Below, piece by piece: positions 1 through 57,849 of a DNA stretch of 64,000 nt. Within the stretch, counting starts at the first letter, position 1. Each line of letters begins with the position of its first letter. The DNA is taken from contig NC_087252.1 of assembly GCF_037042905.1 (NCBI RefSeq), positions 38,378,001 through 38,442,000 of the forward strand. The letters run 5' to 3'. The position numbers and the translations under genes were made by a program. This stretch comes from Lytechinus pictus. Taxonomy: Eukaryota. The notes beneath the pieces were generated by a model. It made no database searches, had not been told where the DNA came from, and saw only the letters and a list, made by a program, of their open reading frames with translations.

Positions 1-437
1 AAAAAGTTTTATCATATTTGGCTTCTTTCCTTTACCGTTATCTGCACTAAAAACTTGCCCTCAATTCTTGACCACTCGGGATTTTAAGATTAAGTATCGT
101 ATTTTTGACAGTGCTATGTTCATCGATGACATTTATGACGCATTGGTATTATTCTTGGACCTCTAGTCCTTCGCCTTTGATCCTTGGTCTTAAAATGGGC
201 AGTTCGGATTACCAAATTCATTTTTGTTTTAATTATTGCTGGTAACATTGATATGATTGGTGTTTATTCCGCCAATGAAACCGCCATCTCTGGTAAAATT
301 GCGTTTCTTTAATCAATGAAGACTACCCGGTATGTACTGGGCTACCGATATGGTACAAGTCGCTGTAATAATGCACCATCTTGCGTCTGTGGCGAAAGTA
401 CTGATAAATAAAATGGCGTCGCAACGACGTAACTCAC

Positions 438-538
438 CACTGACTTGAATAGTGGTATTTGATGACCCCAGTCGATTGTATGCCACGCACGTGTAGTTTC
501 CATAATCCCGTCTCGGATCCAATGATATTATGACGAGT
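438..538 (-). CDS. Ig-domain gene, coding exon 8: second half of Ig3 (LVIISLDPRRDYGNYTCVAYNRLGSSNTTIQVS); 5' boundary could be 538, 553 or 592
   Basis: DYGNYTCVA-x-N-x-LG is the IgLON Ig3 signature. Phase-1 donor G|gtgagt at 438/437. Best canonical phase-2 acceptor is cttttccacag| at 539. Confidence 0.85.
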
Positions 539-2946
539 CTGTGGAAAAGATTGCTATGTGATCGTTCCATCGGAGATATCGATATTAGGAATCGTGATAA
601 AGTCAAACGTGAATTGACGGCAGTTGCATGATTATAACACGAGGTGGTACAAATACACATAATGTACAAATTGAAGCTTGGCAAGACATGAAATTGTTAG
701 TTGATGGAAACATTGAAGGCAAATACATGCACACTGACTAACAATGTACATACACAGGAGATCATCGAAAAAAAATGATAGTTTAGGTATTGATTCAAAT
801 TATGATATTTAAAGATAATAAGCCAATCTACTATTATGCATAGGGGCAGGTTAAATGTGTTCTGTCAAATTATCTTGAAGACTGAGAAACACAAATCCTC
901 AGCGTTGATCACAATTTTCAATTTGACTTTAAAAACCGTAGCTTTTTAAATTTCAATCTTTTGTTTCAGCGTCCAACATAAGTTTGAAATACTTTCATTG
1001 TAAAAATACTTAAAAAGACTATTACATTCATGGTGCGCTAGAGTGCATACGAGATTGTGAATGAGTGCTAAACTACGGTGAAAAAAAATAGTTTACATAT
1101 TTCATAGAGATATTCAAATGAGTGAGAGTAATGAATTAAAAAATAAATAAAAGTAAATTAATTGATATGAATTAAATAAGTTCAGCCATGTCAGCTTATT
1201 ATAGCCAAAATGTGTTTCTGTAGCTGTTATAATAGTCAATATTCACTAGTAGCTGGGAGAGAGAGAGAGGAAGTAGGAACGATACAAACAATAAGACAAT
1301 AAGCGCGAAGCGCAATATATTTTCATTTATTTGCGTCTTTGGAATAAATGTATGCGTTCCTCATGCAGGTTTCAAATTATTACATGAATACAAATAGGCC
1401 TCTCTCAATACAGGAGTATGGGGTTGATGACGAAATGTTCTCCCGCTACTTGCCTAGTAAAGTTCTCATAACAAAGCAAAGGAATCCTGCTCGATTGTGT
1501 TAGTGGAAACGGGGACAGCGGAAGAAACGAGACCGAGGTGATGGAGAAAGGGGTTAGTTACACTGAAACAGCAATAGAATTGTGTTAGTATCAGGAGAAT
1601 GTTTAGGATCCACACAATGAGTTAGTACGCCACACCATGCACAAAAATAATCAATAAGTTAGAAGTGGTGTTCGTGAATGAAAAAGGATAACATTACAAG
1701 TCAGTTTGTGTTTAGAACTGGAAGGTGTGAGTCTGATGGGTTTGTGTAACCTTGACCATTTATCCAGCATATTTATACATACTATGGCGCGCCACTTCTA
1801 TTAGATTGAGAGACCGTTAAATTCTTAATTTTTTGCAAGTTCCATTTATTAGTGGTGACTTGCATTTTCTAATGTCAAAGTATTTTTTTTTCTAAAGTTG
1901 ATTCCTGATTTGTGTCATGCATTTCTATTTTGTTTGGTAGATTGAATATATCAGCTTGAGAGCTGCCTGTTTTGTTTTGTTTTCAAATAAACCAATAAAA
2001 AAATAAAATTTAATTCAATTTCTTGATATCAAAAATTGTGAATTTGAATTAACAAGACATGATTTTGATACATTAAAACGAATGATTTTTTTTATACAAC
2101 GAAATCGATTTTCTGGCATGAAGATTTTAAATCTTGACATACATAATTACAATTTACTGATAAACGGCTTGACATGCGTACGTCGACACACGCTGTTTAA
2201 TTGTCCACGGGCCCACTGCAGAGAGAGAGCTACGTTTGATTAAAACTCAAAATATCGAGTTTAAGTCCCTAATACGCACTGTTGATTGGCTGAAAGTCGA
2301 TTTGAGTTTAAAATGTTAGAGTTGCGTTTGATTGCACTCTTGCTACAACCAGCCCCTAATGCCACAGTCCCTTAATGAGCATACTGATATCACAATTATG
2401 GACAGCAAGTGAGCAATAAACCTTCATCTTTTATCAGAAATTTATTAAAGTTTTCAGACATTGATTAAAGTTTTCATTTGTATGAAAATAAAAGAAAGAA
2501 TAAAAAGATAAATTGATTGGTTTTATTCATTATACTGACGATTGGCCTGTATAGAATTAAGACAGGTAACTTAAAATATCATCCAGGATAGTCGAGATTC
2601 CTTTTAATATTTCTACTGGGTTGTTTATCCTGCACAAGAGTGAAAGCTTAGAGAGAAATCCCTAATATTACACTGAAGAATACGTAGGCTATCATGTCGG
2701 TCCTTCGGGTAAACCAAAGCTCATAGTTTGGTTTTCATGCTCTTTTTATACATATTTCTCAAATAGATCTCTTAAAGTATTCTTGGCATCCGATTACAAT
2801 TATTCCCATTTTTTTCATTCGCATTGACGTAACCAATGTCAGGATGTTCTCTGGATTGTCGCTGCAATGTTATGCTACCGTCACAACGAAACCGACTCCA
2901 ATCCAACCAATGGCATTATGTTATTGGAAAAAACGTAATAGAAATG

Positions 2947-13489: not shown

Positions 13490-13559
13490 ACTATTACTAA
13501 TACTACTTAACTTGTACCATTATCGACACTAGTAGTAGTAATAGTAGAAGTACTACATG

Positions 13560-13614
<55 letters not shown>

Positions 13615-13692
13615 TCTTCTTTTTCTTCTTCTACTACTACTACTTTTGTCTGCTACTGCTACTTCTAATTCGACTACTTCTACTTCTACTAT

Positions 13693-13749
<57 letters not shown>

Positions 13750-13921
13750 TTTATACTACTACTACTGCTGCTGCAACTACTACTACTACTTTTTACTGCC
13801 GCTGCTACTACTACTACTACTTTTGCTGCTACTACTTCTACTTTACTTCTACTAACATGACTACTATTACTACTACTAGTACTACTACTACTATTACTGT
13901 TACTACTACTACTATTACTAC

Positions 13922-13952
<31 letters not shown>

Positions 13953-14032
13953 TCTATACTACTGTTACTACTAGTACTAGTACTATTACTTTTTATCCTC
14001 CTCATCCTACTTCTACTTACTACTACTACTAG

Positions 14033-14070
<38 letters not shown>

Positions 14071-14320
14071 TTACCACTACTACTACTGCTACTACTACTA
14101 TTACTACTACATCTACTACTACTACTACTCCTAGTCCTCCTACTACTACTACTACTATTTCTAATATTACTACTACTAACATGACTAATACTCATACTAT
14201 TTCTGCTGCTCTATCTATCGTGTTTGTCATCTTTACTATAACAATATTATTTCTATAATTATTATCATCACCATTATCATCATCATCATCACTTTTACCA
14301 TCGTCATCACCATCATCGTA
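13490..14320. repeat. Long imperfect (TAC)n microsatellite followed by (ATC)n
   Basis: Directly visible; explains the low-complexity ORFs at 13557-14380. Confidence 0.97.
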
Positions 14321-14559
14321 AGCATCATTACCTACGTCTTGAAAGCATTTCAATGTTGGTACCTCACTGGAATTGATCACAGGGTGATGACAAATTTGTC
14401 TCTAACTTTAATATTTTCCCTTGAACTTGTTTTCCTCCTCCTCGTCTTGCAATATGCAAATCTGTCATCAGAGCCGCTCATCATTTAAGCCACAAAATCT
14501 ATTATTCAACTCGTTTCTGAAATGCCATCTATTATCATGGATTCAACATCGCCTTTCTT

Positions 14560-14860
14560 CTGCACGCACCGAGCGAGTCATTATAGGCCATCCAATTGAC
14601 ACGTGAAAAACGTCCTCTCTATCACACGCAACTTTACCCAACCCACTTCACACGTGTAAAAGGGTCCTTTCTCGTGCGCCCTTATCTGGTTAATAAATAC
14701 CACCCACTTCACACTGGCACAAATGTCCTCTTTATCACACGCCATGATAGACATTAGATACAGCCCACGTTATACATGTACGTGTAAATGGACCATTTAG
14801 TACACATCGAGCTATTCATCAAATGCCACCCACTTCACACCAGTGAAAAAAGGTCGCCAT
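14560..14860. repeat. Degenerate tandem repeat, ~62-bp unit
   Basis: acccacttcacac recurs near 14641, 14702 and 14828, with a diverged copy near 14763. Confidence 0.55.
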
Positions 14861-15037
14861 ACAAATATGAGATAGACCATGACAGCACCATCATTATGAC
14901 CAACGATCTCCAACATATTGAATCTTGCTTCAATTCAATAAAAAATATGAAACAATTATTAAGGATAAAAACTGAACGAATTAGAAAAGCCAATGGATAA
15001 AATTAATGATTTTCTTTCACAGGGATGGTAATAAAAA

Positions 15038-16650
15038 GGTGCCGGGTAAAAATGGCAGAGGTAATAATGGCAGAGGTAATAATGGCAGAGGTAAAAATGG
15101 CAGAGGTAAAAATGGCAGAGGTAAAAATGGCAGAGGTAAAAATGGCAGAGGTAAAAATGGTAGAGGTAAAAATGGCAGAGGTAATAATGGCAGAGGTAAA
15201 AATGGCAGAGGTAAAAATGGTAGAGGTAAAAATGGCAGAGGTAATAATGGCAGAGGTAAATATGGCAGAGGTAAAAATTGCAGAGGTAAAGATCATGATA
15301 TGCTACATCAACAAGGAAAAAAACAGAACCTTTTCGGTTAATATCAGTCATAGTTATTGAACTTGAATGGACTCCTCTCGACGAAAGGAGTATTATGAAC
15401 TGATTAGATATTATATGGATTTTTCTGTCATCATTTTAGGTCTATACTTTATCGTTGATATGATCAAACTCAAACTATTTCATGCCAAAATAATTTCAAT
15501 TAGTGATTGATGAAAGTATTTATCTTGGCTAGTTCGTATAGTAGAACAACACTTCATCCCATACATAACCAACAATTTTTAATGTAAAGACCAATGTGCG
15601 CTACTATTAACACACTGAAATAGACAAGTTCGGGATTTCTTTGAACCACTGGCATAACTTGGATAACAGAAAAATAACAAAACGTTTTGTAATAAAAGCA
15701 TTTTTTCATATTTCAACATCATAATGGATCCGAATAGATATTGATATGATACGTACATAGTTTAATGTAAATGATATAATGATAGCAACTAGTGTTCAGT
15801 TTTTCAGAGCAATACCTCATTGCACCTAGTCCAAGTGGATGTCAGGTTCCCAACCTAGTTTCTATGGTAACGGTTACCGCATTAATTTTGAAATGTGTAG
15901 CGAATTTAGGGATTTGAATTTTTAGGTGTTTCTTAGGTACCATTCTATCGACCTGTTTTGAAGGGGAAATTCACCCTGACAAATGGTTTACTGTAAAATT
16001 AGCAAAAAAATATATTGGTGAAATTTTGCGGCAAGCCCATCAAAGATTAAGATAGTTATTAGAAGTTTGAGTTTTTATGATCTGTGACGTCATACACTAG
16101 CAGCTGCCCCGTATTTAATGCACCAAAATGTATACTTTTCAATATTTTAATCAGTGGTTAAAAAATAAGAAATACCAACTCAAGTGTTATCAATTTGGTG
16201 CAGAAGATCTACAGCATCATTTGAAAATGTTACCCTTTCCATTAGTCAAACATTATAATTCCAAATTTCTTCTCAGAACCTTTCATATTTAATCTACTGT
16301 ACATGGAGGGGCTTTTTGGGTTTTTTGGCATGGGGGTTTAAAGCTGATCATTTATACCTCTATCATTTTTACCTTTGCCATTATTACCTGTGTCATTTTT
16401 TCCTGTGCCATTTTTTCCTGTGCCATTTCTACCTTTGCCATTTTTACCTCTGCCATTTTTACCTTTGCCATTTTTACCTCTGCCATTTTTACCTTTGCCA
16501 TTTTTACCTCTGCCATTTTTACCTTTGCCATTTTTACCTTTGCCATTTTTACCTCTGCCATTTTTACCTTTGCCATTTTTACCTCTGCCATTTTTACCTC
16601 TGCCATTTTTACCTTTGCCATTTTTACCTCTGCCATTTTTACACCGAGCC
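15038..16650. mobile_element. Foldback transposon, TU/Puppy-like, non-autonomous
   Basis: Inverted arms of 15-bp tandem units (GGCAGAGGTAAAAAT)n at ~15047-15290 and reverse complement at ~16352-16642. GG...CC termini. Exact 8-bp TSD AATAAAAA at 15030-15037 and 16651-16658. Confidence 0.88.
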
Positions 16651-19591
16651 AATAAAAATTAGTTGATCGATATTCTTGAATAAAAAAAATAGATATGCAA
16701 TAAAAAAGGGTCTGTGCATTACACACTGTATGCCCTTAAGTCATTTTTTCTTGAGCAAGCAATTATACACAACATTTAAAATATTGTTTTAATCGTTGAC
16801 CTCCAATTAATATAGATATCATAGGACAGTTAAACTGGTAAATCAATTTGTTAGATATAAATTTGCAGTATACATGTATGCACTAAAACTACTACATAAT
16901 ATTTTGGCGAGAGGCTATTTCACTGCAGTTAGTAAAAATACATGCTCAAAACTTAACAATGTTCTTTTCCACAACTTATTTAATGTCGTATCATTTCAAA
17001 AGCTAAACGATGAAGTCCTAACAATTACCTTTCTACTTTAATCAATACTGTATGATCAAATGAGAGTTAAATGTATGATCAAATCAGAGTTAAAAGGGGG
17101 TCATGTATTAAAAAAAAACATGTAAACCGCCTACACAATAACAAAAAAATGATTTTACAGAAGAAAAAAAAAATTGCAGAAAGCAATAACATAATCAGTC
17201 TGTAAGGTCATAAAACGGAATTTTCTGCAGTTTAATAGAACAGGTCTGTAGAAAAAGGGGAAAAGGGTGTTTTATTTAAGGAAATTTGTAAGGTTCCATA
17301 CACCAAATACCAATTTCCTGTAATTTTACATGATATAATGTAAGATTACGCAATTTGGTAAGATTACAGGTGTTCTCGAGAGTCTCCTGCAGGAACTTCT
17401 TTTATTTAAAGGATATATTTTCTAACAGTGTACTGACTTACTGAGGTATTTCTAAATACGACAATTGCGCCTGTCAATGACCATAAAATCATATTTATGG
17501 AAGTATTTATTCTAATATCATTCAATACACAACGATGACAGTTCGGCATGCATTACAGAAAAAGATCAATTTACATAGCTACTCAATAAGATTCCCCAAG
17601 AATATAATTATCTTCGTTGAGTTATGTGATCATAAAGATAGAAATGTGTTCTTTAGTCAGATGGTAATGGACGAATCACTCAACTTAAATACAGCCGAAC
17701 AAAGTCGACAAATGAAAGCGATTGGTATTAATGCTTAACTCTTCTAGTAAGCTGAAATTTTGAGAATATGTTTTTTATTTTATTTTTTACTAGACCTCAT
17801 TATCACCCGAATATACAACATTAGTGGTTTACGGTATAAACCAAATTTATACATGTTTCATGTGAAAGAAAGTATTCAGAATTATTTTATCACTGTTCTA
17901 ATATTACATTTTGGTGGTAAAATGATTGAAGAAATCAGATATAGAAGAATATACATCATTATTTATGTGAAACTGTGACCTTCGTTACATACATACATCC
18001 ATCTACAGACAGACGGACACACACATCGGATATATATATGAAAAAAATATATATTTGTAAATGATCCATAGTTTTCCGCTTTAATTTGTGTTTCATATAT
18101 TTAACCACACCTGGACCCCGTTTCATAAAAGTTACCATGATGGTAACTTTGCCATGTGATGGAAACTTGCATAGAATCCTTGATTTAGATTGGTTGTTGA
18201 ACGTTGTTACCATGGTAGTTACCATTAGATGGTAAAGCTACTATAATATTAACTTCCACGGGGCCCTGAACAAGTAAACCTCATGCAATCACTTCATATC
18301 TACTCAAGACAAAAATTGGGCCTTTTCGTGACCATAAGCATTGTGTTGAAATAAGTTCAAGACCGTGAATAAATAATGAGGAAAAACTGAATGATTAATT
18401 TTCGAGCCGACAAGCAAGGCTGACCACGCGTTTATCATCATAAACCTCTCCGAAATGGTCACTCTGTCAAAACTGACCTAAAGGTTGCACATTTTCTCTG
18501 CGGAGGCACATGAATTATAAATATCGTCAGTGATTGATCATTATCCTTGCTCAATATTCAACGAGGATGTGTCCATTTGTGCCTGAAAATCGATTAATGA
18601 AGAATTATTTCTGTACTGTGGAGCAACCCTCGGTTTATCAAGGTAGGGGGGGCAGGGGATGCTGAATATTATATGAATGATTCCTTCACACAGGAGAGAG
18701 CTTTTACCATTCCCACCCCCTTCCACGCCCCTACGAATCGACCCCAGTAAACGTTTACTGGGCATGGCAATGCCTGCATCTTGAGTTTTGAGAACAGAGT
18801 TCCGTGGTTCGAACTGCAACTCATGAATTCCGGATGGTGGCTTTGATAAAACATGCTTAAAGGTCAAAATTCTAATCTTATTGTACTCTCGTGAACCGGA
18901 TAGTTCCTGATAAGGGACATCCAACTTGCCCCGGAAAGTGGATATTCCTCATCGCATCTCATACTCGTCCACTCATTGCTGCGAGGACCACTCAACTCAT
19001 CTCAACAAAATACTCTTATGAACTCCTTATCTACTCAACGATGTCAAAACCATTCAATTCGTGTTAATTCATATACTATTCTGCTTCAAGTCCCTTTTGA
19101 TCGAAATTCCATTTTGAGATATTCAACTTTTTATGAAAGGCTGTATACTCACACCTAAGACTTCTTCGACCCTCAATTTCATCTTTGTCACTTCCCCCTC
19201 CATTCGGCCTTTTCAGGACCAATCAGTTCGCCAAGGTTATATGTATTACCATTACAACCTCCAAAGATCATCATAGGATAAGCCTAGTTCTTGTAAACAT
19301 GATATGCGAATTTCAGTGTTCATTTGTTGATGAGTTAATAGATATATAGATAGATAGATAGATTATAGATTTTTATACATACAAAGATTCCTTGTTTTAT
19401 TGAGATATCAAGATATATGTAACAAAACTTACTGTAAATTTTTGTTGGAAATGGAAAATAAATGAAATGAAAAATGTAATAAATAGACAGATAGATAGAT
19501 AAATAGATAGATAGATAGATAGACAGATAGAGAAAGAAAGAGAGATAAATGGAGAAGGGTGGGATGGACTGACAGTCATGATCATACTCAC

Positions 19592-19792
19592 TGGCCGCAA
19601 TAATCAGGTGATTGGCCTTGGTCATCCGGCTAGGCCTATCCCTTTTCCACCAGGTCACAATGGGGGCCGGTGATCCATCGACGAGGCATGTGAGTGTCCC
19701 GTTCGAAGATTCGTTAAAGTAGACCCGGTTCGGTTCGGCGGGACTCCAGTAGGGCGCCTCGCTAGGGAGGATCCTTCTAACCGATGCCGGAT
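19592..19792 (-). CDS. Ig-domain gene, coding exon 5: first half of Ig2 (PASVRRILPSEAPYWSPAEPNRVYFNESSNGTLTCLVDGSPAPIVTWWKRDRPSRMTKANHLIIAA)
   Basis: TLTC-xx-DG-x-P-x-P-x-V-x-W I-set motif. ttttcctgcag| acceptor, |gtgagt donor, 201 nt, phase 1-1. Confidence 0.92.
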
Positions 19793-21841
19793 CTGCAGGA
19801 AAGGACGATAGAGGCATTATTTCAGAAAATTTACATAGGTTAATTTGAATACCTTGTAAACTAGTGAATGAATGATTTCTATGATTTCTCTTTTAGCCTA
19901 TTGCAAGGTCAAATTATAGTGCTCAGCTGGAGAAGAGGGTTGGGGCAGGATTGGGGTTGGCCCCATACATTTTTTTATCAACTTACTCTTTATTTGCATT
20001 TTGATAATACGCTTGCCCAAGGGAGTATTGGACCGCTACAATTTCAAAATTCCAAAATACCTTCAAAATCATCTCGATTGATTCGCCTCTCTCGCTTTTA
20101 TGAATTCTTTGACCTTACGTTTTGGTCTCCCTGGGAAATTATTCATGTTCGCACAAATTCAACATGGTACAGATAATCAAAACATAATATTGCATGGGTT
20201 GCGCTTCTTGTCTACTGGGCGAATGGATAACATAAACATTTCATATAAACGGAACAAAGGCAACCGTTGTCATTAATACATGCTCCTTCAAATAGATCAA
20301 ACAATATTGACAAAAATACCAAACAAAGCAACAACAGCAACATGAACAAAATAGTCATTAGGCATATGGGCGTATAATTAGAATTGCTACTGGCAATATA
20401 TTTTGTGGGCCTTGTTCTAGATATCGGTTTCGTCAACAAGAACACTATGATCAATCTGGGAGATGGTATGAAATATCCCCCAGCGCAATGTCCCCTTCTC
20501 ATATTCATTGTATCTTCCTTTGATGGAAGCGCTTCGGATAATGTATCATTAAAAACGCACGTGGTTGGTAAATCATGTGCACTCCCTTGATACGGGGCGA
20601 AGTACAAGACGTGAAGTCAACACCTCAAACCGATCCGGGTGCTACAGTCACACACGCGAAACCGACTACTAACCGACCGATGGGAAGCCATTGGAAATAA
20701 TGTAATAGATCCGATCGGTCTTAAGTCGGTTTCGCCTGTCAGACTGAGGCATGACGATGGATACTTGAAACCGGTTGGGGGATTGACTGCACCAACCTAT
20801 GCCATATCTGTGACCCGAATTCATAAGAGAGTGTATTAAGATGAAGAAGGTTAAAGCAATCTGGGCCCCGTCACACGAAGGTTAGCGATTAATCGCTATA
20901 TGAAATGGCCTATCATGATCATCGGTACATGCGCATTTTGCTCAGTATACTGATTGGGAACTAATCAGAATCGTTCTTTCAAAGGTTAAAAGAAGCGGGG
21001 ACCCGTAGAACAAAGCTTAGTAATCATCGTAGAAGAATATCTTTACAATAAATTTGATCGCATTGACTACACTCTACAATCAATCCTGAAAATCAAGCGC
21101 ACGATTAATCGCTAACCTTTGTGTTACTGGACCAAGGTTGATTTTGACGTATTTAATCACACAGTCACACCAACAAAAACGTTTTCAAACCGACCAATAC
21201 TCATATATATATATATTATATTGAAGCAATGTGATTAAATGCCCCATCTTCTAAACCCCTTGGTCATAGAAATGGACGGGAGAGTATTGATCCAGTGCAA
21301 CTTAAACAAGAGTACATTTAAATTTAACAATATTCTAAGAATTCAAGCCAATCTTTATCTGCAACACAATACTTCTTACCGATATTCATATATGATGATG
21401 AAACCTTAAGTTCAATGTTTGACATGGCCTACTTTATTCCAGGATTAATGTTTGTATGAATAATGATGAAACTTTTATAATTATATCCAATCTCATCAAC
21501 ACTTGTATCCATCTTTTGAAGTCCATTGTGTCTCCACAATTAGAAAACCCAATCATTAATAAATAATTTCTCTTTGTTAATTCACCTTGAGACCCCTGCT
21601 AAGTAGTTATGGAAAGCCTATTTAACTATGGTACGCCACGTTAGTTTTAATCTGAGTACCGAGGGTCGTAACAATACTCCGTATCCAAAGGAACGGCACG
21701 CGATGTTTTGTACGAGTCGAAAGATAAAAGAAAAGAGGTACAATTAAAATGCAACCGACAGGAAATTTACACGTGTAAATTTCACGCTACTGAGCACATA
21801 TAGGCATATATTGTGTAGTATACTCAATGTACGGACATTGA

Positions 21842-26785: not shown

Positions 26786-27172
26786 GCATAATACTGTAAT
26801 GTATAGAAGATTCCAATTAGGATTGAAAATATTGATAGGAAGTCATTTAAGTGAATTAAAGAAGAATTACACTACAAACGTTATCACAGTCGGATGTAAA
26901 AGAAATAAAGTTATTGCATTTTAGCAATTCGCTTAAATATTTGCAAAACACGTAGGGGGGTTAACACGAGTAACTTATGGCTATCTTGACGATGCAATAA
27001 CAACCACGATACGCTAATCGGAGTTGCCAGAGATGCGCCAGCTGCACATCACCAACGCATGCAAGGCGATGGATTCAGCCTCCAAGATGGCGGCCCGATG
27101 ACGTCATTACATAAGGTCTAGATTGAAAACAAGTGGGTGGTGTGCGGAGCTCGCTATAAGAGTAATACTTAC

Positions 27173-27313
27173 TTATTCCTTTGTTGTTCTTATACCAGAC
27201 AACAGGATAGTCCCCCAGATCAGAAACTCGGCATTTGAAATGAGCATTACCGCCTTCGTTGACTCGAATCATAACTTGCACGTTGTGTGTGATGAAATAG
27301 GGCATTCCAGGAG
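27173..27313 (-). CDS. Ig-domain gene, coding exon 3: first half of Ig1 (PGMPYFITHNVQVMIRVNEGGNAHFKCRVSDLGDYPVVWYKNNKGI)
   Basis: B-strand Cys and C-strand Trp (CRVSDLGDYPVVW, lachesin/DIP-like). tttttcattaaag| acceptor, |gtaagt donor, 141 nt, phase 1-1. Confidence 0.9.
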
Positions 27314-30300
27314 CTTTAATGAAAAATAAGTACGAGAGGAAAATTGCTTCAATTAGAAAAAAGTCCATTAATCATATGAACAGCGAACACTGCATAAAGC
27401 ATGATTTCTTTTTTACTAAGGGATCTTTTCTTCAACTTCCAACATTGGATATAAATAACCTTTGGCGTTTAACATTATTGGCATTTTGAATGGCGTATTC
27501 TCCAAAAGGATATACACTTGGTATGGAAGTAATGATTGAGAGCTCAGCACTAGGCCTAATCTAAAATTGGTATTATTATTCTTATAACAAATTCCAAATT
27601 AGGGATTTTCAATCTTTATTTAGGAATAAAAATATCACTGCTCTACGTGGAAAATTCATAGAACCTCATAAGTGCAAGCGAAGGAAGTTCATTTCTTGCA
27701 AGAGTAATTCTTTCGCAATGTGTGACATTCTTAAACGTTATTTTTTTACAGTGTTTATTATGAAGAGAAATGGGTGGATATTTATTCAAATGTAGCCTTT
27801 CGCAGCAAGTGATTTCAGGAAAACTTAGAGATCTATTTACATTAAATTGAATGTTTATTTTTTATTTAGACATTATTTTCAGACTTATTTTTTTTTCTTA
27901 ATGGCTTGCATGACCGTCTCGTCTGGGGGGCTTCAGCTTAAAATTAAGAAGCTTATTAATTTAGTCATAATTAACTGTTGTAAACCATTCATCACAATTA
28001 TCGATAAAAAATCTAAAAAAACAAAAATATTTGTAACAGCAGGAACAGCAAATCACACGCACATAAACCCTAAAACTAACAAGCACATGCTAATCAAAAT
28101 TAAAGTTTTAAAAATAAGAGGAGTGAACAAAATATCTTTTGCAAAATGCATAGTAATGAATTCGATGGCAAGGAAAAAAAATCGCTGAAATCATATTATT
28201 AATGCAGTCATATCATTCCATATCAATATAATTCAAAGAAAAATGGTGAATTGGCTTCTTATGTGGCTACGTCTCTTCCCCTTTGGGAAGTGGTAAGTAT
28301 ATTGATAATTTTTTTTTAATAGACGAGCAGTTTTTCGCCGCACAGGTTTCAAGAAACCGTTTATTCTTGGTCGATTCACATTTGTAGGAGTAATGATAAA
28401 TCGTCAAATACATTCACTCGAGTGGCCATGCTTTACCATAATCTAGACATTCCATTAATTCGTGCATGTCGGTTCACTTCAATTACAAAACATGAGAGTT
28501 CACACCCACGCTCAACTCTAAATGATTGAATTAAAATATTTATTAAACTGCCCGTATTCTAAACTCCGGTTTACCATAAACCGTGGTCTCAATCCAAGGG
28601 CGTAGGAAGGGGGGTGAACCTCCACTAATACTAATACTTCTGGCTTCCCATAATTTCAGCCCTGGCTTTGACCATGGTTAAAGTTAAACGAGTACTCAGA
28701 ATTTTTTGGGCATTCAATGTGTTTCCATCTTACCCGATACTGGTCTAAATATAGGGGCTGGAAGGTGGTCGGACCAAACATTGAGCAATGGAGCAGAAGA
28801 ATGGTGATGGAATCAATGCAAATAAAAAATTCTTTGGGGAATCAAGCAAATAAATGTGATGGAATGGTCATGATTTATATCATACAACGCACAAACCAAA
28901 GAAACATATAAAAAGCCTCATGCAACATGCGCTTCAATCGCCACGCTAGAAGCAAAATCAGATAATGGTAAACAGAATACGACATCATGTGAAATATAAA
29001 CGATCTGGCTAAATTTTAGAAAAAGATACAATAACACAAAGAAAGTCATATATTAGCACGAAAACACAGACAGATAGGGATCGTACACGAGAAATAAGAC
29101 CGAAGAATAAATAATCGTTTGGCATATAAGGTGTCCGACCTAAAGAGTCTCTTTTCGATCAAACAAGTTTTGAAAACATAATATACCTAGGGGCCCGTTT
29201 CATAAAGGACTTGTTGTAACTTTGCCATTATGGCAACTACCACGATAACCTTGATTCTGATTGGCTGATGAGCCCTGTTACCATGGTAATTGCCATAACG
29301 GCAAAGTCACAACAGTGGTAAGTCTTTTGTGAAACGAGCCTCGTGCATATGCATCTAATGAATAATCATTTATTTATTCTTGTAATAAATCAAAAAATCC
29401 AATAATGGAAAAAAAATTGACGAGAAAAAAAGGAGGATCATCACTCCCATATAAAGGAATTGGGGGTTTCGGGTCCTTTTTTTTCTTGGATCCGCGTCTG
29501 ATTTGTTATAATTCTTTTACCAGTCGAATAAGTCTTGTAAATATCACAAGAGGAGATTTTTAAAATATTAAACCAAAAATTCTTCGAAAGTCACGGTAAT
29601 TTTGAGAACCTTAAACCCCTATTAGCTTTTTTTAGAAAACTGCCCCCGGACAATCCTATATTCACCACTTGTATCTGTTAGGCTAGTCAGCTGTAAGAGC
29701 ACATAATTATATAATAAAGTGGATAACAAAATATCATTTAATAGTTAATAGTGTTTCCGAGAAAGTGCTTGTCCTAAATCTTAAGTAGATATAAAGCTTT
29801 ATTTTGAAGAATGATATGAAAATATTCTTAAGGGGAAATATAAATGAATCGTGTTTTTTTTGTATGACTTAACAAAGGTATGGAGCCTTGGAAGTTATAC
29901 TATGTTGGTGTAAATTGAATCATTTTAGTATTTTAGTATAAAAGTATCATATCAATGTGTATCACGCATACGGGAAAGGAGTAGACATTTATTCCCAAAT
30001 ACTAACAATATCATCTTGTGATTGCTAGAATTAAAAACATGTAGTATTTTTTTTAGAATAAGGTAAATAGACACCACGTCAATTCATGAGTATATTTGTT
30101 TTACCACTTAGCTTAGCTTGAGTTAATTTATCACGTAATTCCTTCTTAAATTTACATATTCCATAATCAAGACAAAACATTTTTACGTGCTGTAAAAGAC
30201 AATTTTCCAAAAGTAGGTAGCCTAATTTAAACAGATATTGAGTCATTAAGCTATATCGAATATCAAAGGTAGATGCTTAGTCATTGTTTCATATAATGTG

Positions 30301-39500: not shown

Positions 39501-40499
39501 AATTATTGGTCAAAATGATGCCAATCGTAATCTAAAAATTAAATGTTTTAGATTTGAATACCCATTTCTACAGTATATTAGAGATTTTAAGCTGGGTGGT
39601 CACAAATTCATTATTATAAAAACGAAATTATGTCACACCGGCGAAGCCGCCTCCAGGTCGAACAAATATTTCATGTTAATCCAAATAAAGTGTGGTAAGG
39701 TCCCCCAAGTTTGCGCAGTGCAATGACCACAAACTTTACACATGCAATACATAGAAAGATGGTCTTTAAAAATCCAACTCAAAATGGTGGGGAAATAATG
39801 AATTTCGGGTATTTCATGTGACGGCCTCGAAACGCACCCTTTCTCATCAAAATCCCCGGATCGTGTGTAAACTGAATGGGTGGGCAGACATCGGGCACCA
39901 TTTTTCTTTCTTTTTTTTAAGTCTAAGAATGATTGGCCAAAGGGTTTTTTTCCCACGAATATCATGTATTTCTCTCACTTATTTTTTTATGTGAGATTTT
40001 TGACACACTTACTTCTAAGAATACAAGGTACATTATCTACTGAATTTGTTGGTGAAATAAAAAAAATATGATTTATCATAAGCTGCATTGTTGGGTGCGC
40101 AGACAGGAGGGGGGTTCATATATCTGATCGGCTTGGAGACTGCTTCACCCGTGTGAATTTAGCCTGAACAATAGACATACAATTACTCATAGTACATCTA
40201 ACTGCAAGAACACTTAAGGAAGTAATGTCGTACAACAAAGTAATATATACGGTATTGTTCATATTTGGGGTGGGTGGGGGATTAATTAGTTATAACATAT
40301 CTTTGACAAATGTAGGTCCTTAAAACACAATTCAATTTTGTCAGAAAATAATAATTCTTTGATGTAATTTGTTAGTTTCATTATAAGGAATCATAAAATA
40401 TATTTAATGGTAATTTGTCGCCTGACAAATCCCATAATATTTTACTATCCAATATAACCATAGTCAATATTATTTTATTCGAGCTCTTTATTTAAAAAA

Positions 40500-42500
40500 A
40501 TAACATTATTGCAAATTAATTTCATACATCCTCAGTCATAATGGCGTCTACTAATTGATTAGGGTCGGTTAGATAGTATGGAATTGACATGTCAGATCGG
40601 TTTACCGTTTCATACTTACCCGGTGGTGTCGTTTTCGGAGCCATTGTACAATTTCTGTACATTGACCCGGGGAACGCGGTATCCGAAGATGCGACTTCTT
40701 GAGCACATTTGCTGTTGCTAATCGGCTCGGTAAAAGCCGTTGATCCGATGATTATCCGGCCTTGAAATAGCTCTGGATTTGGTATTTGACGGGGGAAACG
40801 AAGGGCGGGTTTGTGGGGAACTGGTTTTGGGAACAACGGGTGTATAGCGAAAGGGGTAAGTGAGAGGGGTATTCAGTTTGCCAAAAGAGGGTAAACAGTT
40901 AGTAAGGGGTTACGAGATAAAAGGGTCCAGTTAAGGATTGTATTTTGAAGCAAATAGTTTGATGAAGGAGGCATTTGGGTCGTAAGCGGTCATGTGATGA
41001 ATTATCCGGATGAACGAGTGAGGTATATGGAGGAATTTTAGAGCAAAGGTGGTCAATACATGGAGGTATTCTGATCGGAAGGGGTAAGTGCAATGGGGTA
41101 TTTAAAAATGAGAGGGTGTAAGTAAGGGGTTATGCCGGATTAAAAGGGGTTGATGTGGGGGAGCATTATTTGAAGGTCGGATAAGTACCAAATAAATTCG
41201 GCGTAGAACATGTAAAATAGCAAGGGCATTTTGGGTGCAAGTATGGGAAGAGAGCGGGGAAATCCAGTGTGAGAGGGGATAAAGCAAATTGGTATATTTC
41301 AGAACAAAAAAATTGGAAAGTGTAGGGGCAGTATTCGTAAAGATACAAGTTGCGAATTGAAGGCGGATAGTGAAGATTGTTATTCCACAATGAATAAGGT
41401 TAATGAAGAGGGGATTTAGGAGCGAGAGGGGTAAAAGAGAGGGGTATTCCAATGCGAAGGCGGGAAGATGGATTAGGAATGGGAGTTGGTGTTGGAGCGT
41501 CGGTGGGATGTCGGGGGTTAATTCAGAGGCATTTCAAGAAGAGAAATGGGTTGAAGGGGGTATTTCACAACATCGTGTTGACAAACATCAATCGATAAAG
41601 AGCAGTTGACGGATCGGAAGAAAAAACTCGTGGGAGATGTATTGTGGATGATGGTGAGTCATGAGAAATGATTCCAGAATCCGTCAAGTTTTTGTAAAAG
41701 GTTAACCGTAAAAGATATTTGGTGCATTGGGAAGAAGGTGTCGGAAATGTACCAGTTTCGTTCAAAATTCGGATTTCGTAGTGCCATACGAGGGTTTCGA
41801 TATTCAGGATGGGAACGAATATTTCATAGTAATTTTGGAAAAAGAAGTTGTGTGTTTGTTCGTTTTTGTGGGTTTTTTTTGGGGGGGGTATTGTTCATTT
41901 TTTTAGTGTCGGAAACCAAACGGATGAAAAACCCGGCGATCGCCAGGGAAATTAATAAGAACAATTGTAAGTTAAAAGTGTTCACATTTGAGAATACCGG
42001 AATCCGAATAATCATTTACATCCACGGAGCAGAAAAGAAATAAAAAAGGTACACAAATATATAAAAAGGTTAAAGGTCATTTGGATAAATGTGTTAGTAA
42101 GAGGGTTCGTAGGAATTAGTAGGTACGGAGGTTAGGGCGCATGCGTACCATCAAGTCACGTGATGAGGAAACGTACACAATAAATAAACATAAGTGAATA
42201 CAATGGGTTTGAGTGCATTTGGGTAGGCAGAACGGAAAAATATGAATAATCATTAGTTTAGTAGGCCCATGTCACATCATTTAATGCATACTGTATATGT
42301 TCGTGTTAATACATGTATCTTAAACATTTTTCCTTATTTCTTGTTATGGCTTTAATATGCTCACTGAAATCTAAATCATATATATAGACATATCGTCATA
42401 TATTATATATATATACATTGTAAACTCCTGAAGAAGACGGAGGACCGTCGAAAATTCGAGTGAACAATAAAAACTTTATTGAAAATCAAAGCATTATCAT
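40500..42500. mobile_element. Unclassified ~2 kb element ending in the hammerhead motif; probable non-autonomous Penelope-like derivative; boundaries approximate
   Basis: Abrupt G-rich/C-poor plus-strand skew, broken minus-strand ORFs (40522-42015), hammerhead plus polyA signal, short TA-rich tracts around the right end. Confidence 0.45.
42424..42461 (+). ncRNA. Minimal type I hammerhead ribozyme motif of the Penelope-like-element class
   Basis: ACTC-CTGAAGA-A-GACGG(agga)CCGTC-GAAA-AT-TC/GAGT. Complete catalytic core, 5-bp stem II, 4-bp stem I (ACTC/GAGT), palindromic minimal stem III (AATT). AATAAA follows at 42466. Confidence 0.8.
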
Positions 42501-45500
42501 CATAAATATATATATATTTATAACATTAGGTTTCCAAGATCCTCCAAATTGAAACTTGAAAATTCTATGAAGATAAACCTTACTGTAGAATAACATAATA
42601 ACACTGTATCGAATATATTTTCAGTATTTACTGAAAAAGGTAATATCATGGAATCAAAATGGTAATTTTCAATTAATATTAAGAACACTTTGAAGTAATT
42701 AACCAGTTTGTATGAGCTCTTCTCTAAAGACTTTGATTTCTCTTTAAGAGCGTTAGTAACGCCGTTTTTTACGAATAGGGTCCCGCATGGCGTCTGAATT
42801 ATGACCTTTGAAAAACCAAGCTCCTCTTTTCAATTATTTACAGGTTATAACTTGGGATTCCATCTCCCCTAGCTCCCCTAAGCTAAAATATCCCTGTGCA
42901 AGTCAAATTGTGCGGAAGTCTTATTCATATTTCTAAGTACCATTGTCAGTAAAATTATAAAGTTGAGAAACAATGCTGATTCACAGACGAATTATTGTCA
43001 TTACCAAGAGCATGACAAATCACTGAATCTTTTATGAATTTCGTTTATAATTCTGCTGGAACATTAACATATTATCCGCGTTTTTGGTCATCCTGTTAAG
43101 CTTATGTTTACTTTAGCTTAAGGTTCACAATAATCTCTCTCGAATTCCCACCCCCTCCCCCAAAAATACATGGATGCAATATTCAGATATATTCAAACAT
43201 GTCATACACACTAAATTTCAAGGATTTAGAATAAGTCTATAGAGCGTTTGTGAAGGTGACCGGCCTAACGTTGAAATTTATTATTACTCATTTAGATATA
43301 TTTGTAAATCTCAAAGGAATGAGATTCAAATCTTTTTGGTTAAAATTCAATCCCAGGTTTAAAGGTTTAAATCTAAATATATTATTCGATTGGTCTCTAT
43401 TTCCAGCCGTTATGGACATGCCTAAATTTCTCAGAATTATCATTATTCATTGTTGCTTGAGGAATCGATCGCTTTTAATAGATAATAGTATTTTGTTTCC
43501 AAATAAAAATGAAAGTTTTACGAAATACACTCAGATAATACAATATAATGCAAATAATACTATATATATTCTCTGGAATGATCAATGTCTATACACATAA
43601 ATATGTTGTATCTACATCAGACACTTCTTTTTCAACTACCAAACTACCCGTTCCCCTTCTCGGTGAACGATCGCCCCCAGAGCGCGCGAACGATGAAGAA
43701 GAAGATTCCTTGCCACTGTGACAGATAAGACTCAGGAATAGACCGACCGTGGTTAACACGTAAAGGACCGTATGAATTGTTAACCAACCACGGAAGGCTG
43801 GGAGCTACCAATGAGGATGCGGTGTCCAGGGCACAGTGAGAGTCGGAAAGGGGCATAAAATAGCGAAGGCGCTACGGGGGTATTTGAATGACCCCCCCCC
43901 CCCCCCCACACACACACACACACCACCACCACCACCACCATCACAACCACCTCGAGGATAAAGCGAGCAAGAGGCACCATTAGTGTTGGTACCTCGAGCT
44001 TCTACTCTGAATAATAATAATTGCTATTGTTTAAAGCATTTAACCACCCATGCATGACTGTTCACATGAAAATGTCATGTCATACTGGAAGAGGAATATT
44101 GTCTGGTCATGTTGACATACAATAATTTGCCTTTAATCAAATATCTATACGGAATATTTTAAGTTTTATAAGTGTCCAAGAACTTTTTTTGCCGAGTGTA
44201 TATAAAAAAAATTAGTTCCATGATTTATGATAAAATTATGTTTTTCCTATGAGGTAATTAAGAGGTGAGTGAAAAATATTGACTAGCTAATAACCTCTAT
44301 TACTTCTTTATAAATTCTCTATATCTTTTCATATGTTCAAGATAGAAACAACTCGAATGTTGCATTACATGTTTTATTCTACAACCCTTAAAAATGCAGA
44401 ATCTCCTGAAATATGCACACTGGTCGCTGCACCATGTTGTTAGAGAAATATGTTCAATGATAAAAAACCCGTACGCAGTCAATAGTAAACAATAACCCAC
44501 AGATGAGACCGGTGGAGGTGAATAAAACAATGACGTCACTGTGTGGATTATTGCTCATATATACGTACAGGGATTTGCCAAGGGATACCACACTGTCGGC
44601 ATAGGTCGGTAATATTTGACTCCTCGGGAGAAATGGAAGGTCATAAAAGATGCTTGAAAATGCGAGTAAGGCTTAAATATACCCGACCTCATGAATTTTC
44701 GATTAGAGTTTCATTAACGAAGAGGTGACAATAAATTAACATTTTTTGGGAGCCGTGGTAAACAGGAAACCATGAGCGTGTAATTGCACTTAGACATTAT
44801 GCGAAATATTCTGAAAATCTTGCAAAAGCCTCATAAGACGTTTAATGAAGCAAAATATTATTTAAAACATTATGTGACTGAAAGATTAAAAGAACATAAT
44901 TTTGCATCACCAAGCATTCAAATAAGTTTTGCACAATCAAAATAAAATTGGTCATAATCAATTACTTTTATCAAAATCATGGATTAATAATTTGACGAAA
45001 CCTCTACATCCAAAAGAATTTTGATATTGTAAAATAGCCTTAAGAACGGACATACTGAAGCTTTTCGACATGCACTCTTTGGAGTAAAATCGCATGAATG
45101 ACTAAAACGCGAGATAAAAACAATATATAATAGAACCGAAACTAGACAATAGACGCTAATTAATTTTGATATTATTCACTTGTACTGAAAACAAAATATT
45201 ATGAGACTGGATACCAACGATAAAATGTGATAAATTCAAAGGTTCTTTCCGAAAATTGTAGATCTAACAATATTTGCCTGGGATTCGGTATAATCTGTTA
45301 AAACAGATTATCATCATTGTTATATTCCAGAATTTGGTCATTGAATTTACGATAAAATTATTTCAAAAAAGAGGGCATTTCTGGTACCCTGCCATGCGTT
45401 GCTACAATTCATTGATTCTAGGGCGGATGGTCGGGGGTTCCTTCCAAACTTCATGAAAGGCGAATGTCAAGATATTTTTTTTTCAGGAAGCTTCGTGTTT

Positions 45501-57712: not shown

Positions 57713-57849
57713 NNNNNNNNNNNNNNNNNNNNNNNNNNNNNNNNNNNNNNNNNNNNNNNNNNNNNNNNNNNNNNNNNNNNNNNNNNNNNNNNNNNNNNNN
57801 NNNNNNNNNNNNNNNNNNNNNNNNNNNNNNNNNNNNNNNNNNNNNNNNN
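57713..57849. other. Assembly gap (137 N)
   Basis: Run of N. Confidence 1.

What the first reader, a model, noticed from the sequence alone, without database searches (positions are those of the whole stretch)
42424..42461. Intact minimal hammerhead ribozyme (Penelope type) antisense in an intron of the Ig gene
Seen: every core nucleotide is in order. Stem I 5' strand ACTC (42424-27), CUGAAGA (42428-34), one extra A, stem II GACGG/CCGTC with an AGGA loop, GAAA (42450-53), a minimal palindromic stem III (AATT), cleavage triplet UUC (cut after 42457) and stem I 3' strand GAGT. AATAAA follows 5 nt later. Established: Penelope-like retroelements carry such minimal type I hammerheads in their pseudo-LTRs, and the palindromic stem III lets them cleave efficiently as dimers. 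Inference: this is a single copy with no partner in the window, so cleavage would need a trans dimer or a tandem transcript from another locus. It lies on the strand opposite the host pre-mRNA.
Basis: partly seen in the sequence, partly recalled or inferred. Interest (0 to 1): 0.8.

Follow-up and report, generated by a model that had tools for sequence, protein, structure and literature searches.

The report
Hammerhead ribozyme in dead Penelope fragment
The 38-base motif is a real, sequence-intact minimal hammerhead ribozyme, but it sits in a 90-base dead fragment of a Penelope-like retrotransposon that has about a hundred copies in this sea-urchin genome, so it is an ordinary example of a known thing.

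Summary
Window 42424-42461 (+) reads ACTC-CTGAAGA-A-GACGG-AGGA-CCGTC-GAAA-ATTC-GAGT, with every hammerhead core position in order.

It is not chance:
- The 30-base core occurs 98 times in the genome at up to 3 mismatches, 32 of them exact. The reversed control gives 0.
- A covariance model built only from other hammerhead families of this genome finds it at 44.5 bits, E about 5e-11.
- Across those families helices I and II covary.

The motif lies in an ~88-bp 5'-truncated tail (42415-42502) of a Penelope-like element (PLE), inserted in a (TA)n microsatellite. Longer copies elsewhere run upstream into reverse-transcriptase and GIY-YIG endonuclease remnants. The family also shows inverted head-to-head pairs and an optional 33-nt tail.

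All ribozyme details match the published PLE minimal hammerhead: the extra base after A9, the G10.1-C11.1 pair, and AAUU in place of helix III.

- The literature reports low, protein-assisted cleavage, not efficient dimer cleavage.
- "In an intron of the Ig gene" is unproven. Ig exons on the minus strand were found only at 0.3-27.4 kb.

The window copy has no partner, no promoter evidence and no cleavage evidence, so it is most likely inert. The scan already holds 31 notes on hammerhead and Penelope in this genome.

The parts
42377..42414 (.). TA-rich microsatellite on the 5' side of the insertion (target tract)
   Evidence: Read. Most genomic copies of the family are flanked by (TA)n on one or both sides.
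42415..42502 (+). 5'-truncated (and 3'-short) tail fragment of a Penelope-like element, ~88 bp
   Evidence: Homology to the dispersed family covers query 279/316-403/423 of window 42100-42800. The alignment to 47 other copies shows where identity starts and stops.
42417..42421 (+). Outer helix I, 5' strand AUUGU, which pairs with 42464-42468
   Evidence: RNAfold MFE and centroid
42424..42427 (+). Inner helix I, 5' strand ACUC
   Evidence: Helix I covaries across families (CUC/GAG, UCC/GGA, UUC/GAA).
42428..42434 (+). Core box C3-U4-G5-A6-A7-G8-A9
   Evidence: These columns are invariant in alignment A1.
42435..42435 (+). Extra unpaired A between A9 and G10.1
   Evidence: The same position is occupied in every family of this genome. 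It is named as a hallmark of PLE minimal hammerheads in PMC4209133.
42436..42449 (+). Helix II GACGG/CCGUC with loop AGGA (G10.1-C11.1 closing pair)
   Evidence: Helix II is 84% paired over 20 representatives, and 4 of its 5 pairs change on both sides.
42450..42457 (+). G12-A13-A14, the palindrome A15.1-A15.2-U16.2-U16.1 (no loop, so helix III can form only between two molecules), and the cleavage-site base C17 (predicted cut after 42457)
   Evidence: AAUU is shared by all families. Cleavage itself was not shown.
42458..42461 (+). Inner helix I, 3' strand GAGU
42464..42468 (+). Outer helix I, 3' strand ACAAU
42466..42480 (+). Hairpin AAUAAA-AAC-UUUAUU directly after the ribozyme. It contains the AATAAA hexamer and overlaps the outer helix I.
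   Evidence: It is present in the family majority sequence and in the centroid fold of a longer copy.
42503..42527 (.). TA-rich tract on the 3' side of the insertion

Best explanation
Window 42415-42502 (+) is a dead, 5'-truncated tail fragment of a Penelope-like retrotransposon (PLE) that integrated into a (TA)n microsatellite. The fragment carries the element's minimal type I hammerhead ribozyme with every catalytic-core position intact.

In an active element the ribozyme lies about 60-93 nt before the 3' end of the unit. It has no helix III of its own. Its AAUU palindrome can pair only with a second copy, in a tandem transcript or in trans, and published work indicates that the element's protein helps it fold. 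Its proposed job, not proven in the literature, is to process multi-unit PLE transcripts.

At this locus there is one copy, no coding part, no partner and no evidence of plus-strand transcription. The motif is therefore most likely inert sequence that still looks intact because the insertion is fairly young. The steps shown here are motif identity, family membership and the insertion anatomy. Self-cleavage and any role at this locus are inferred or unknown.
For: - Motif as described.
- 98 genomic matches at up to 3 mismatches, 32 exact, against 0 for the reversed control.
- Copies have ragged 5' ends. Three long copies (L061, L062, L063) share 1.3-1.7 kb of upstream homology.
- The open frames of L061 and L063 show YIDD; L061 also shows a CX4CxxC linker and an IYIGET GIY-YIG core.
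- Weak Pfam hits for L061 frames: RVT_1 at 1.7e-3 and GIY-YIG at 8e-3.
- 111 homologues down to E 3e-42, most carrying RVT_1 and/or PF26215.
- Head-to-head inverted 5'-truncated partners: nine minus/plus pairs in the list and one in L061.
- Two 3'-end classes, at +59/60 (22 copies) and +92/93 (16 copies), give an optional 33-nt tail.
- (TA)n flanks.
- These are the published PLE hallmarks (PMC8557442; PMC11167929).
- The generic minimal-hammerhead pattern gives 731 genomic hits against 73 for the control.
- Across families, 76% of cells are paired against 59% in shuffles and 26-40% when slid. The covariation score is 0.465 against 0.20, with 0 of 500 shuffles as high.
- A model built without this family hits the window at 44.5 bits, E about 5e-11.
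- The extra base after A9, G10.1-C11.1 and the palindromic 15.2-16.2 are the features listed in PMC4209133.
Against: - No full-length pLTR-ORF-pLTR copy of this family was recovered.
- The Pfam hits to RT and GIY-YIG are below the curated cut-offs.
- Rfam hammerhead models do not report the motif.
- No cleavage evidence. RNA-seq reads of a related organism cross the predicted cut site with no pile-up of ends there, at depth of only about 20-50.
- The 3' end of the window copy (+45) fits neither of the two usual end classes.
Confidence: 0.9

Rival explanations
1. The ~90-150-nt copies belong to a non-autonomous hammerhead element (retrozyme-like or SINE-like) that only shares its tail with the PLE and is copied in trans by the PLE enzyme. 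They would not be truncated PLE copies.
For: 17 of 48 copies start at nearly the same point, about 13 nt upstream of the core. One direct tandem pair lies 165 nt apart at C2:24847713 and 24847878. A 2026 preprint argues that animal retrozymes derive from PLE pLTRs.
Against: 5' ends are otherwise ragged, and homology runs without a break into RT/EN-coding sequence in long copies. No tandem arrays were seen for this family. 3' ends and tails are shared with the long copies.
Confidence: 0.06
2. The motif has been taken over by the host. It would act as a working ribozyme that cuts an antisense or upstream transcript of the Ig-gene region.
For: The core is intact. The same fragment is kept in the paralogous segment at C8:28.38 Mb.
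Against: - The flanks are equally well kept in the paralogue (94-98%), so the retention is neutral.
- A monomer cannot form helix III, and monomers were inactive in vitro (PMC4209133).
- There is no partner in the window.
- There is no evidence of plus-strand transcription.
- The window copy has already picked up two substitutions in the tail relative to its paralogue and the family.
Confidence: 0.02
3. A chance match to the loose hammerhead consensus in AT-rich DNA.
For: The loosest pattern (CTGANGA...GAAA...TH) is as common in the window as in shuffles: 10 matches against 8 expected.
Against: The stricter pattern is expected 0.11 times in the window. The exact 30-mer is a 98-copy repeat. The independent model gives E about 5e-11.
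Confidence: 0.005

Closest known systems
Minimal hammerhead ribozymes (min-HHR) of metazoan Penelope-like elements (Cervera & de la Pena 2014, PMC4209133)
   Same: - Type I topology and a complete core.
- One unpaired base between A9 and G10.1, and the G10.1-C11.1 pair.
- No helix III hairpin, but a palindromic 15.2-16.2 (AAUU).
- A short helix I of 4 bp.
- Mostly single dispersed copies from truncated PLEs, with some pairs on opposite strands.
- Several consensus families per genome, with compensatory changes between them.
   Different: Helix II is 5 bp here, against 7-8 bp in the Schistosoma families. The motif is followed directly by an AAUAAA/UUUAUU hairpin. This particular sea-urchin family is not named in the papers I could read.
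Poseidon PLE of Anolis carolinensis, PAc (Frangieh et al. 2024, PMC11167929)
   Same: The hammerhead lies a few tens of nt upstream of two alternative reverse-transcription start sites. The spacing between those sites gives the optional 30-40-nt tail. Here the 3' ends fall at +59/60 and +92/93 from the cut site, a 33-nt tail. Integration is into AT-rich DNA.
   Different: In PAc the hammerhead overlaps the start of the ORF. Here no ATG or ORF start is seen around the motif. Protein-assisted cleavage was shown for PAc only.
Neptune and Nematis clades of PLEs, and Naiad (Arkhipova 2006; Craig et al. 2021, PMC8557442)
   Same: A CX2-5CxxC linker before the GIY-YIG domain (CDKPRCQIC in L061) and a (TA)n insertion bias. 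Also 5' truncation, inverted 5'-truncated partners and a one-sided tail.
   Different: Clade assignment was not tested by phylogeny. Naiads have an N-terminal EN and lack canonical hammerheads, so this family is not a Naiad.
Non-LTR (metazoan) retrozymes
   Same: A type I hammerhead with a weak helix III, related to PLE pLTRs.
   Different: Retrozymes are tandem arrays that give small circular RNAs. This family is dispersed, 5'-truncated and continuous with coding copies, and the window holds one copy.

Membership tests
Hammerhead ribozyme, minimal type I (PLE type) | Core C3-U4-G5-A6-N7-G8-A9, G12-A13-A14, A15.1/U16.1 and H17, in this order between helices I and II | tested here: met
Hammerhead ribozyme, minimal type I (PLE type) | Helices I and II supported by pairing and by covariation among related sequences | tested here: met
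   76% of cells paired against 59% in shuffles and 26-40% when slid. 8 of 9 pairs change on both sides. Score 0.465 against 0.20, 0 of 500 shuffles as high. Caveat: I picked the 20 representatives by hand from the list.
Hammerhead ribozyme, minimal type I (PLE type) | One nucleotide between A9 and G10.1, a G10.1-C11.1 pair, and palindromic 15.2-16.2 in place of a helix III hairpin (PMC4209133) | tested here: met
   A at 42435, G42436-C42449, AAUU at 42453-56. The same holds in the other families.
Hammerhead ribozyme, minimal type I (PLE type) | Match to curated Rfam hammerhead models | tested here: not met
   No hit at gathering score or at E<=10 in 301 bases. My explanation, not tested: the curated models expect a helix III, which this motif lacks. 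Treated as a limit of the models, not as evidence against the motif.
Hammerhead ribozyme, minimal type I (PLE type) | Self-cleavage 3' of H17 | tested here: inconclusive
   RNA-seq raw reads of a related organism laid on a long copy. Reads cross the site (L061 307/308) and no pile-up of ends is reported, at depth of only about 20-50 in an ordinary library. A biochemical assay cannot be done with these tools.
Penelope-like element (EN+) | A single frame with RT followed by a C-terminal GIY-YIG endonuclease | tested here: met
   Met in long copies, not in the window. L061 and L063 open frames have YIDD; L061 also has CX4CxxC and IYIGET. RVT_1 at E 1.7e-3 and GIY-YIG at E 8e-3, both below the curated cut-offs. 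111 homologues down to 3e-42. The frames are broken by frameshifts.
Penelope-like element (EN+) | Insertion anatomy: 5' truncation, an adjacent inverted 5'-truncated copy, an optional 30-40-nt tail, and an AT-rich or (TA)n target | tested here: met
   Definitions from PMC8557442 and PMC11167929.
Penelope-like element (EN+) | pLTR-ORF-pLTR partial tandem with a hammerhead in each pLTR | tested here: inconclusive
   No full-length unit was recovered. There is one direct pair 165 nt apart. Further fetching was blocked.
Non-LTR retrozyme | Tandem arrays of short hammerhead-bearing units | tested here: not met
   One copy in the window. Genomic copies are dispersed or in inverted pairs.

The most novel reading that the evidence does not exclude
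The AAUAAA-loop-UUUAUU hairpin that follows the ribozyme in this family overlaps the outer part of helix I, so the two folds exclude each other. It could be a switch that decides between ribozyme folding and another 3'-end event. That event could be polyadenylation at AAUAAA, or recognition by the element's reverse transcriptase ahead of the two start sites at +59 and +92. If so, this urchin family would be a tractable model for how PLE hammerheads are controlled. Nothing here tests this.
Probability: 0.08. Interest if true: 0.4.

Novelty: already known. Interest (0 to 1): 0.12.

Why it matters
It matters little by itself. The case shows that a tool-less reader can spot a true minimal hammerhead that Rfam's models miss. 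It also adds one more sea-urchin family to the long list of Penelope-associated hammerheads.

For annotation it has three practical uses:
- The 88 bp should be masked as a PLE fragment.
- The neighbouring 2 kb should not be read as part of a ribozyme-terminated mobile element.
- The two 3'-end classes, 33 nt apart, agree with the internal-initiation model of PLE reverse transcription.

Tried and rejected
- Rfam scans at gathering score and at E<=10 gave no hammerhead hit.
- The loosest hammerhead pattern is no more frequent in the window than in shuffles, so it was dropped as a test.
- Per-column conservation of the core against the flanks among copies was dropped. The copies were chosen by their core, so the test is circular.
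- Within-family 'compensatory' doubles (GAUGG/CCAUC and GACGA/UCGUC) were not counted as evidence. Both changes are CpG transitions, which are expected in decaying copies.
- RNA evidence for cleavage. Only contigs or a related organism's reads were available, and no end pile-up at the cut site was seen. This gives no support and no refutation.
- A search for Ig exons above 27.4 kb, to prove the intron claim, found none.
- The idea that 40.5-42.5 kb is a 2-kb ribozyme-terminated element was rejected. That stretch has a single paralogue and no other copies.

Full report
**Observation.** In hammerhead numbering:
- C3-A9 is 42428-34.
- An extra A is at 42435.
- G10.1-C11.1 is 42436/42449, and helix II is 5 bp with loop AGGA.
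- G12-A14 is 42450-52.
- A15.1, A15.2, U16.2 and U16.1 are 42453-56, with no loop.
- C17 is 42457.
- Helix I is ACUC/GAGU.

RNAfold adds an outer helix I (AUUGU 42417-21 with ACAAU 42464-68) across an AA/GA internal loop. The active-arm structure costs -15.4 kcal/mol against an MFE of -15.7, with z = -3.5 against shuffles. AATAAA is at 42466-71.

**Is it more than chance?** Yes.
- A very loose pattern is as frequent in the window as in shuffles.
- CTGANGANG...CGAAA is expected 0.11 times and occurs once.
- The 30-mer occurs once in the window and never in shuffles.
- In the whole 812-Mb assembly the 30-mer has 98 matches at up to 3 mismatches, 32 of them exact. The reversed control has 0.
- Rfam's curated hammerhead models report nothing. 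I read this as a limit of models that expect a helix III; I did not test that.
- I built a covariance model from 14 hammerheads of other families of this genome, leaving the window's family out. It finds 42422-42463 over its full length with all nine pairs standard, at 44.5 bits and E about 5e-11. The next hit has E 0.34.

**What the motif belongs to.** BLAST of 42100-42800 against the assembly shows that only about 42378/42415-42502/42522 is repeated. Extracting 48 distinct copies gives this picture:
- The 5' side is ragged. 17 copies start about 13 nt before the core, as the window copy does. 16 extend further. 10 abut an inverted copy.
- The 3' side ends in two classes, 59-60 nt (22 copies) and 92-93 nt (16 copies) after the cut site. 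That is an optional 33-nt tail.
- Most copies are flanked by (TA)n.
- Three copies (L061, L062, L063) share 1.3-1.7 kb of upstream homology. L061 is preceded by an inverted 5'-truncated partner.
- The broken open frames of L061 and L063 show YIDD. L061 also shows a CDKPRCQIC linker (CX4CxxC) and YCLLCARCPHAIYIGET...NNH.
- Pfam gives weak RVT_1 (1.7e-3) and GIY-YIG (8e-3) hits for L061 frames.
- A database search with the RT piece finds 111 homologues down to 3e-42, one of them from the urchin Diadema setosum.

The following are the published signatures of EN+ Penelope-like elements (PMC8557442; PMC11167929):
- 5' truncation.
- Inverted head-to-head partners.
- A one-sided 30-40-nt tail that reflects two internal start sites of reverse transcription.
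- A (TA)n bias linked to the CX2-5CxxC linker.
- A hammerhead near the 3' end.

The window therefore holds an ~88-bp tail fragment (42415-42502). Its 3' end, at +45, is shorter than either usual class.

**Is the hammerhead fold supported by evolution?** A generic pattern with the extra base, the G10.1-C11.1 pair and a WW palindrome gives 731 genomic hits against 73 for the reversed control. By my own sorting of the 100 rows listed, about 82 fall into seven families. These share the core, the extra base (A in six families, U in one) and AAUU. They differ in helix II, with complementarity kept: GACGG/CCGUC, GCCC/GGGC, GGUC/GACC, GACGU/ACGUC, GGUUGC/GCAGCC, GGUAGA/UCUACC and GAUCU/AGGUC. They also differ in helix I: CUC/GAG, UCC/GGA and UUC/GAA.

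On an alignment of 20 representatives the named structure gives these figures:
- 76% of cells are paired, against 59% in shuffles and 26-40% when the partner is slid.
- 8 of 9 pairs change on both sides.
- The covariation score is 0.465 against 0.20, with 0 of 500 shuffles as high.

The caveat is that I chose the representatives by hand, four of which look like background hits. The features match those that Cervera & de la Pena (PMC4209133) list as emerging from PLE minimal hammerheads.

**How it works.** As a single molecule AAUU cannot close a hairpin, so helix III can form only between two copies.
- A Schistosoma monomer was inactive, and dimers and trimers cleaved poorly.
- The Anolis PLE ribozyme cleaved only with the element's protein present.
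- That ribozyme was not needed for insertion in vitro, and no RNA-seq ends mapped to its cut site.

I laid RNA-seq raw reads of a related organism on a long copy. The tail is covered at depth about 20-50. Reads cross the cut site (L061 307/308) and no pile-up of ends is reported there. Many reads carry head-to-head joints just upstream of the ribozyme. This neither supports nor refutes cleavage.

At the window locus there is one copy, no partner and no coding part. Inertness is the most likely state.

**Surroundings.**
- The flanks 40300-42414 and 42503-44600 are single-copy apart from one inverted paralogous segment, C8:28378644-28383057. It is 94-98% identical and carries the same fragment with the same ends.
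- The insertion is therefore older than that duplication.
- Ig half-domain exons lie on the minus strand at 316-696, 19338-19892 and 27078-27371.
- None was found between 36.5 and 60.6 kb among the ten longest minus-strand open stretches.
- The motif is on the strand opposite the Ig gene. Whether it is intronic remains open.

**Comparison and novelty.** This is a member of the known class of PLE minimal hammerheads. The scan's own index holds 31 notes on hammerhead and Penelope in this genome, one of them followed up with the same conclusion for another family. That note is also my only source for calling the genome a sea urchin. The only mildly unusual detail is the AAUAAA/UUUAUU hairpin that follows the ribozyme and competes with the outer helix I. 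I did not test it.

**Verdict.** The object is ordinary: a dead Penelope tail with an intact minimal hammerhead. Interest is low.

Noticed in passing
window 40300-44600 and G000:C8:28378644-28383057: An inverted segmental duplication about 10 Mb away on the same chromosome, 94-98% identical over at least 4.3 kb. It includes the same truncated PLE fragment. Its full extent was not mapped.
   Followed up: partly
window 44020-44204: A ~185-bp high-copy repeat with at least 70 copies at 92-98% identity. Elsewhere in the genome it occurs as inverted pairs about 850 bp apart, like the terminal repeats of a ~1-kb MITE-type DNA transposon. In the window only one arm is present (one search found no partner).
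   Followed up: partly
window 316-696, 19338-19892, 27078-27371 (minus strand): Three open stretches with weak Ig hits (I-set, Ig_3, ig). Each covers half an Ig domain, so the Ig domains of this gene seem to be split by introns. No exon was found above 27.4 kb.
   Followed up: partly
L061:319 (G000:C11:10038718), RNA reads of organism B: 32 reads in one run and 59 in the other match the element upstream of the middle of helix II, then continue into a different shared sequence rather than the rest of the ribozyme. This looks like a variant family or a chimeric transcript in the related species. It is unexplained.
   Followed up: no
L061:343/344 and nine genomic minus/plus pairs listed: Head-to-head palindromic pairs of the ribozyme tail, joined only a few nt upstream of helix I, are common in the genome and in RNA reads. 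The joint was seen in 31 reads in one run and 61 in the other. Such transcripts would fold into long hairpins.
   Followed up: partly
window 13510-16735: Low-complexity tandem repeats that give long open frames on both strands, for example an HFYLC-type repeat at 16259-16663.
   Followed up: no
window 57713-57849: A run of 137 N (assembly gap or masked). It was left as it is.
   Followed up: no
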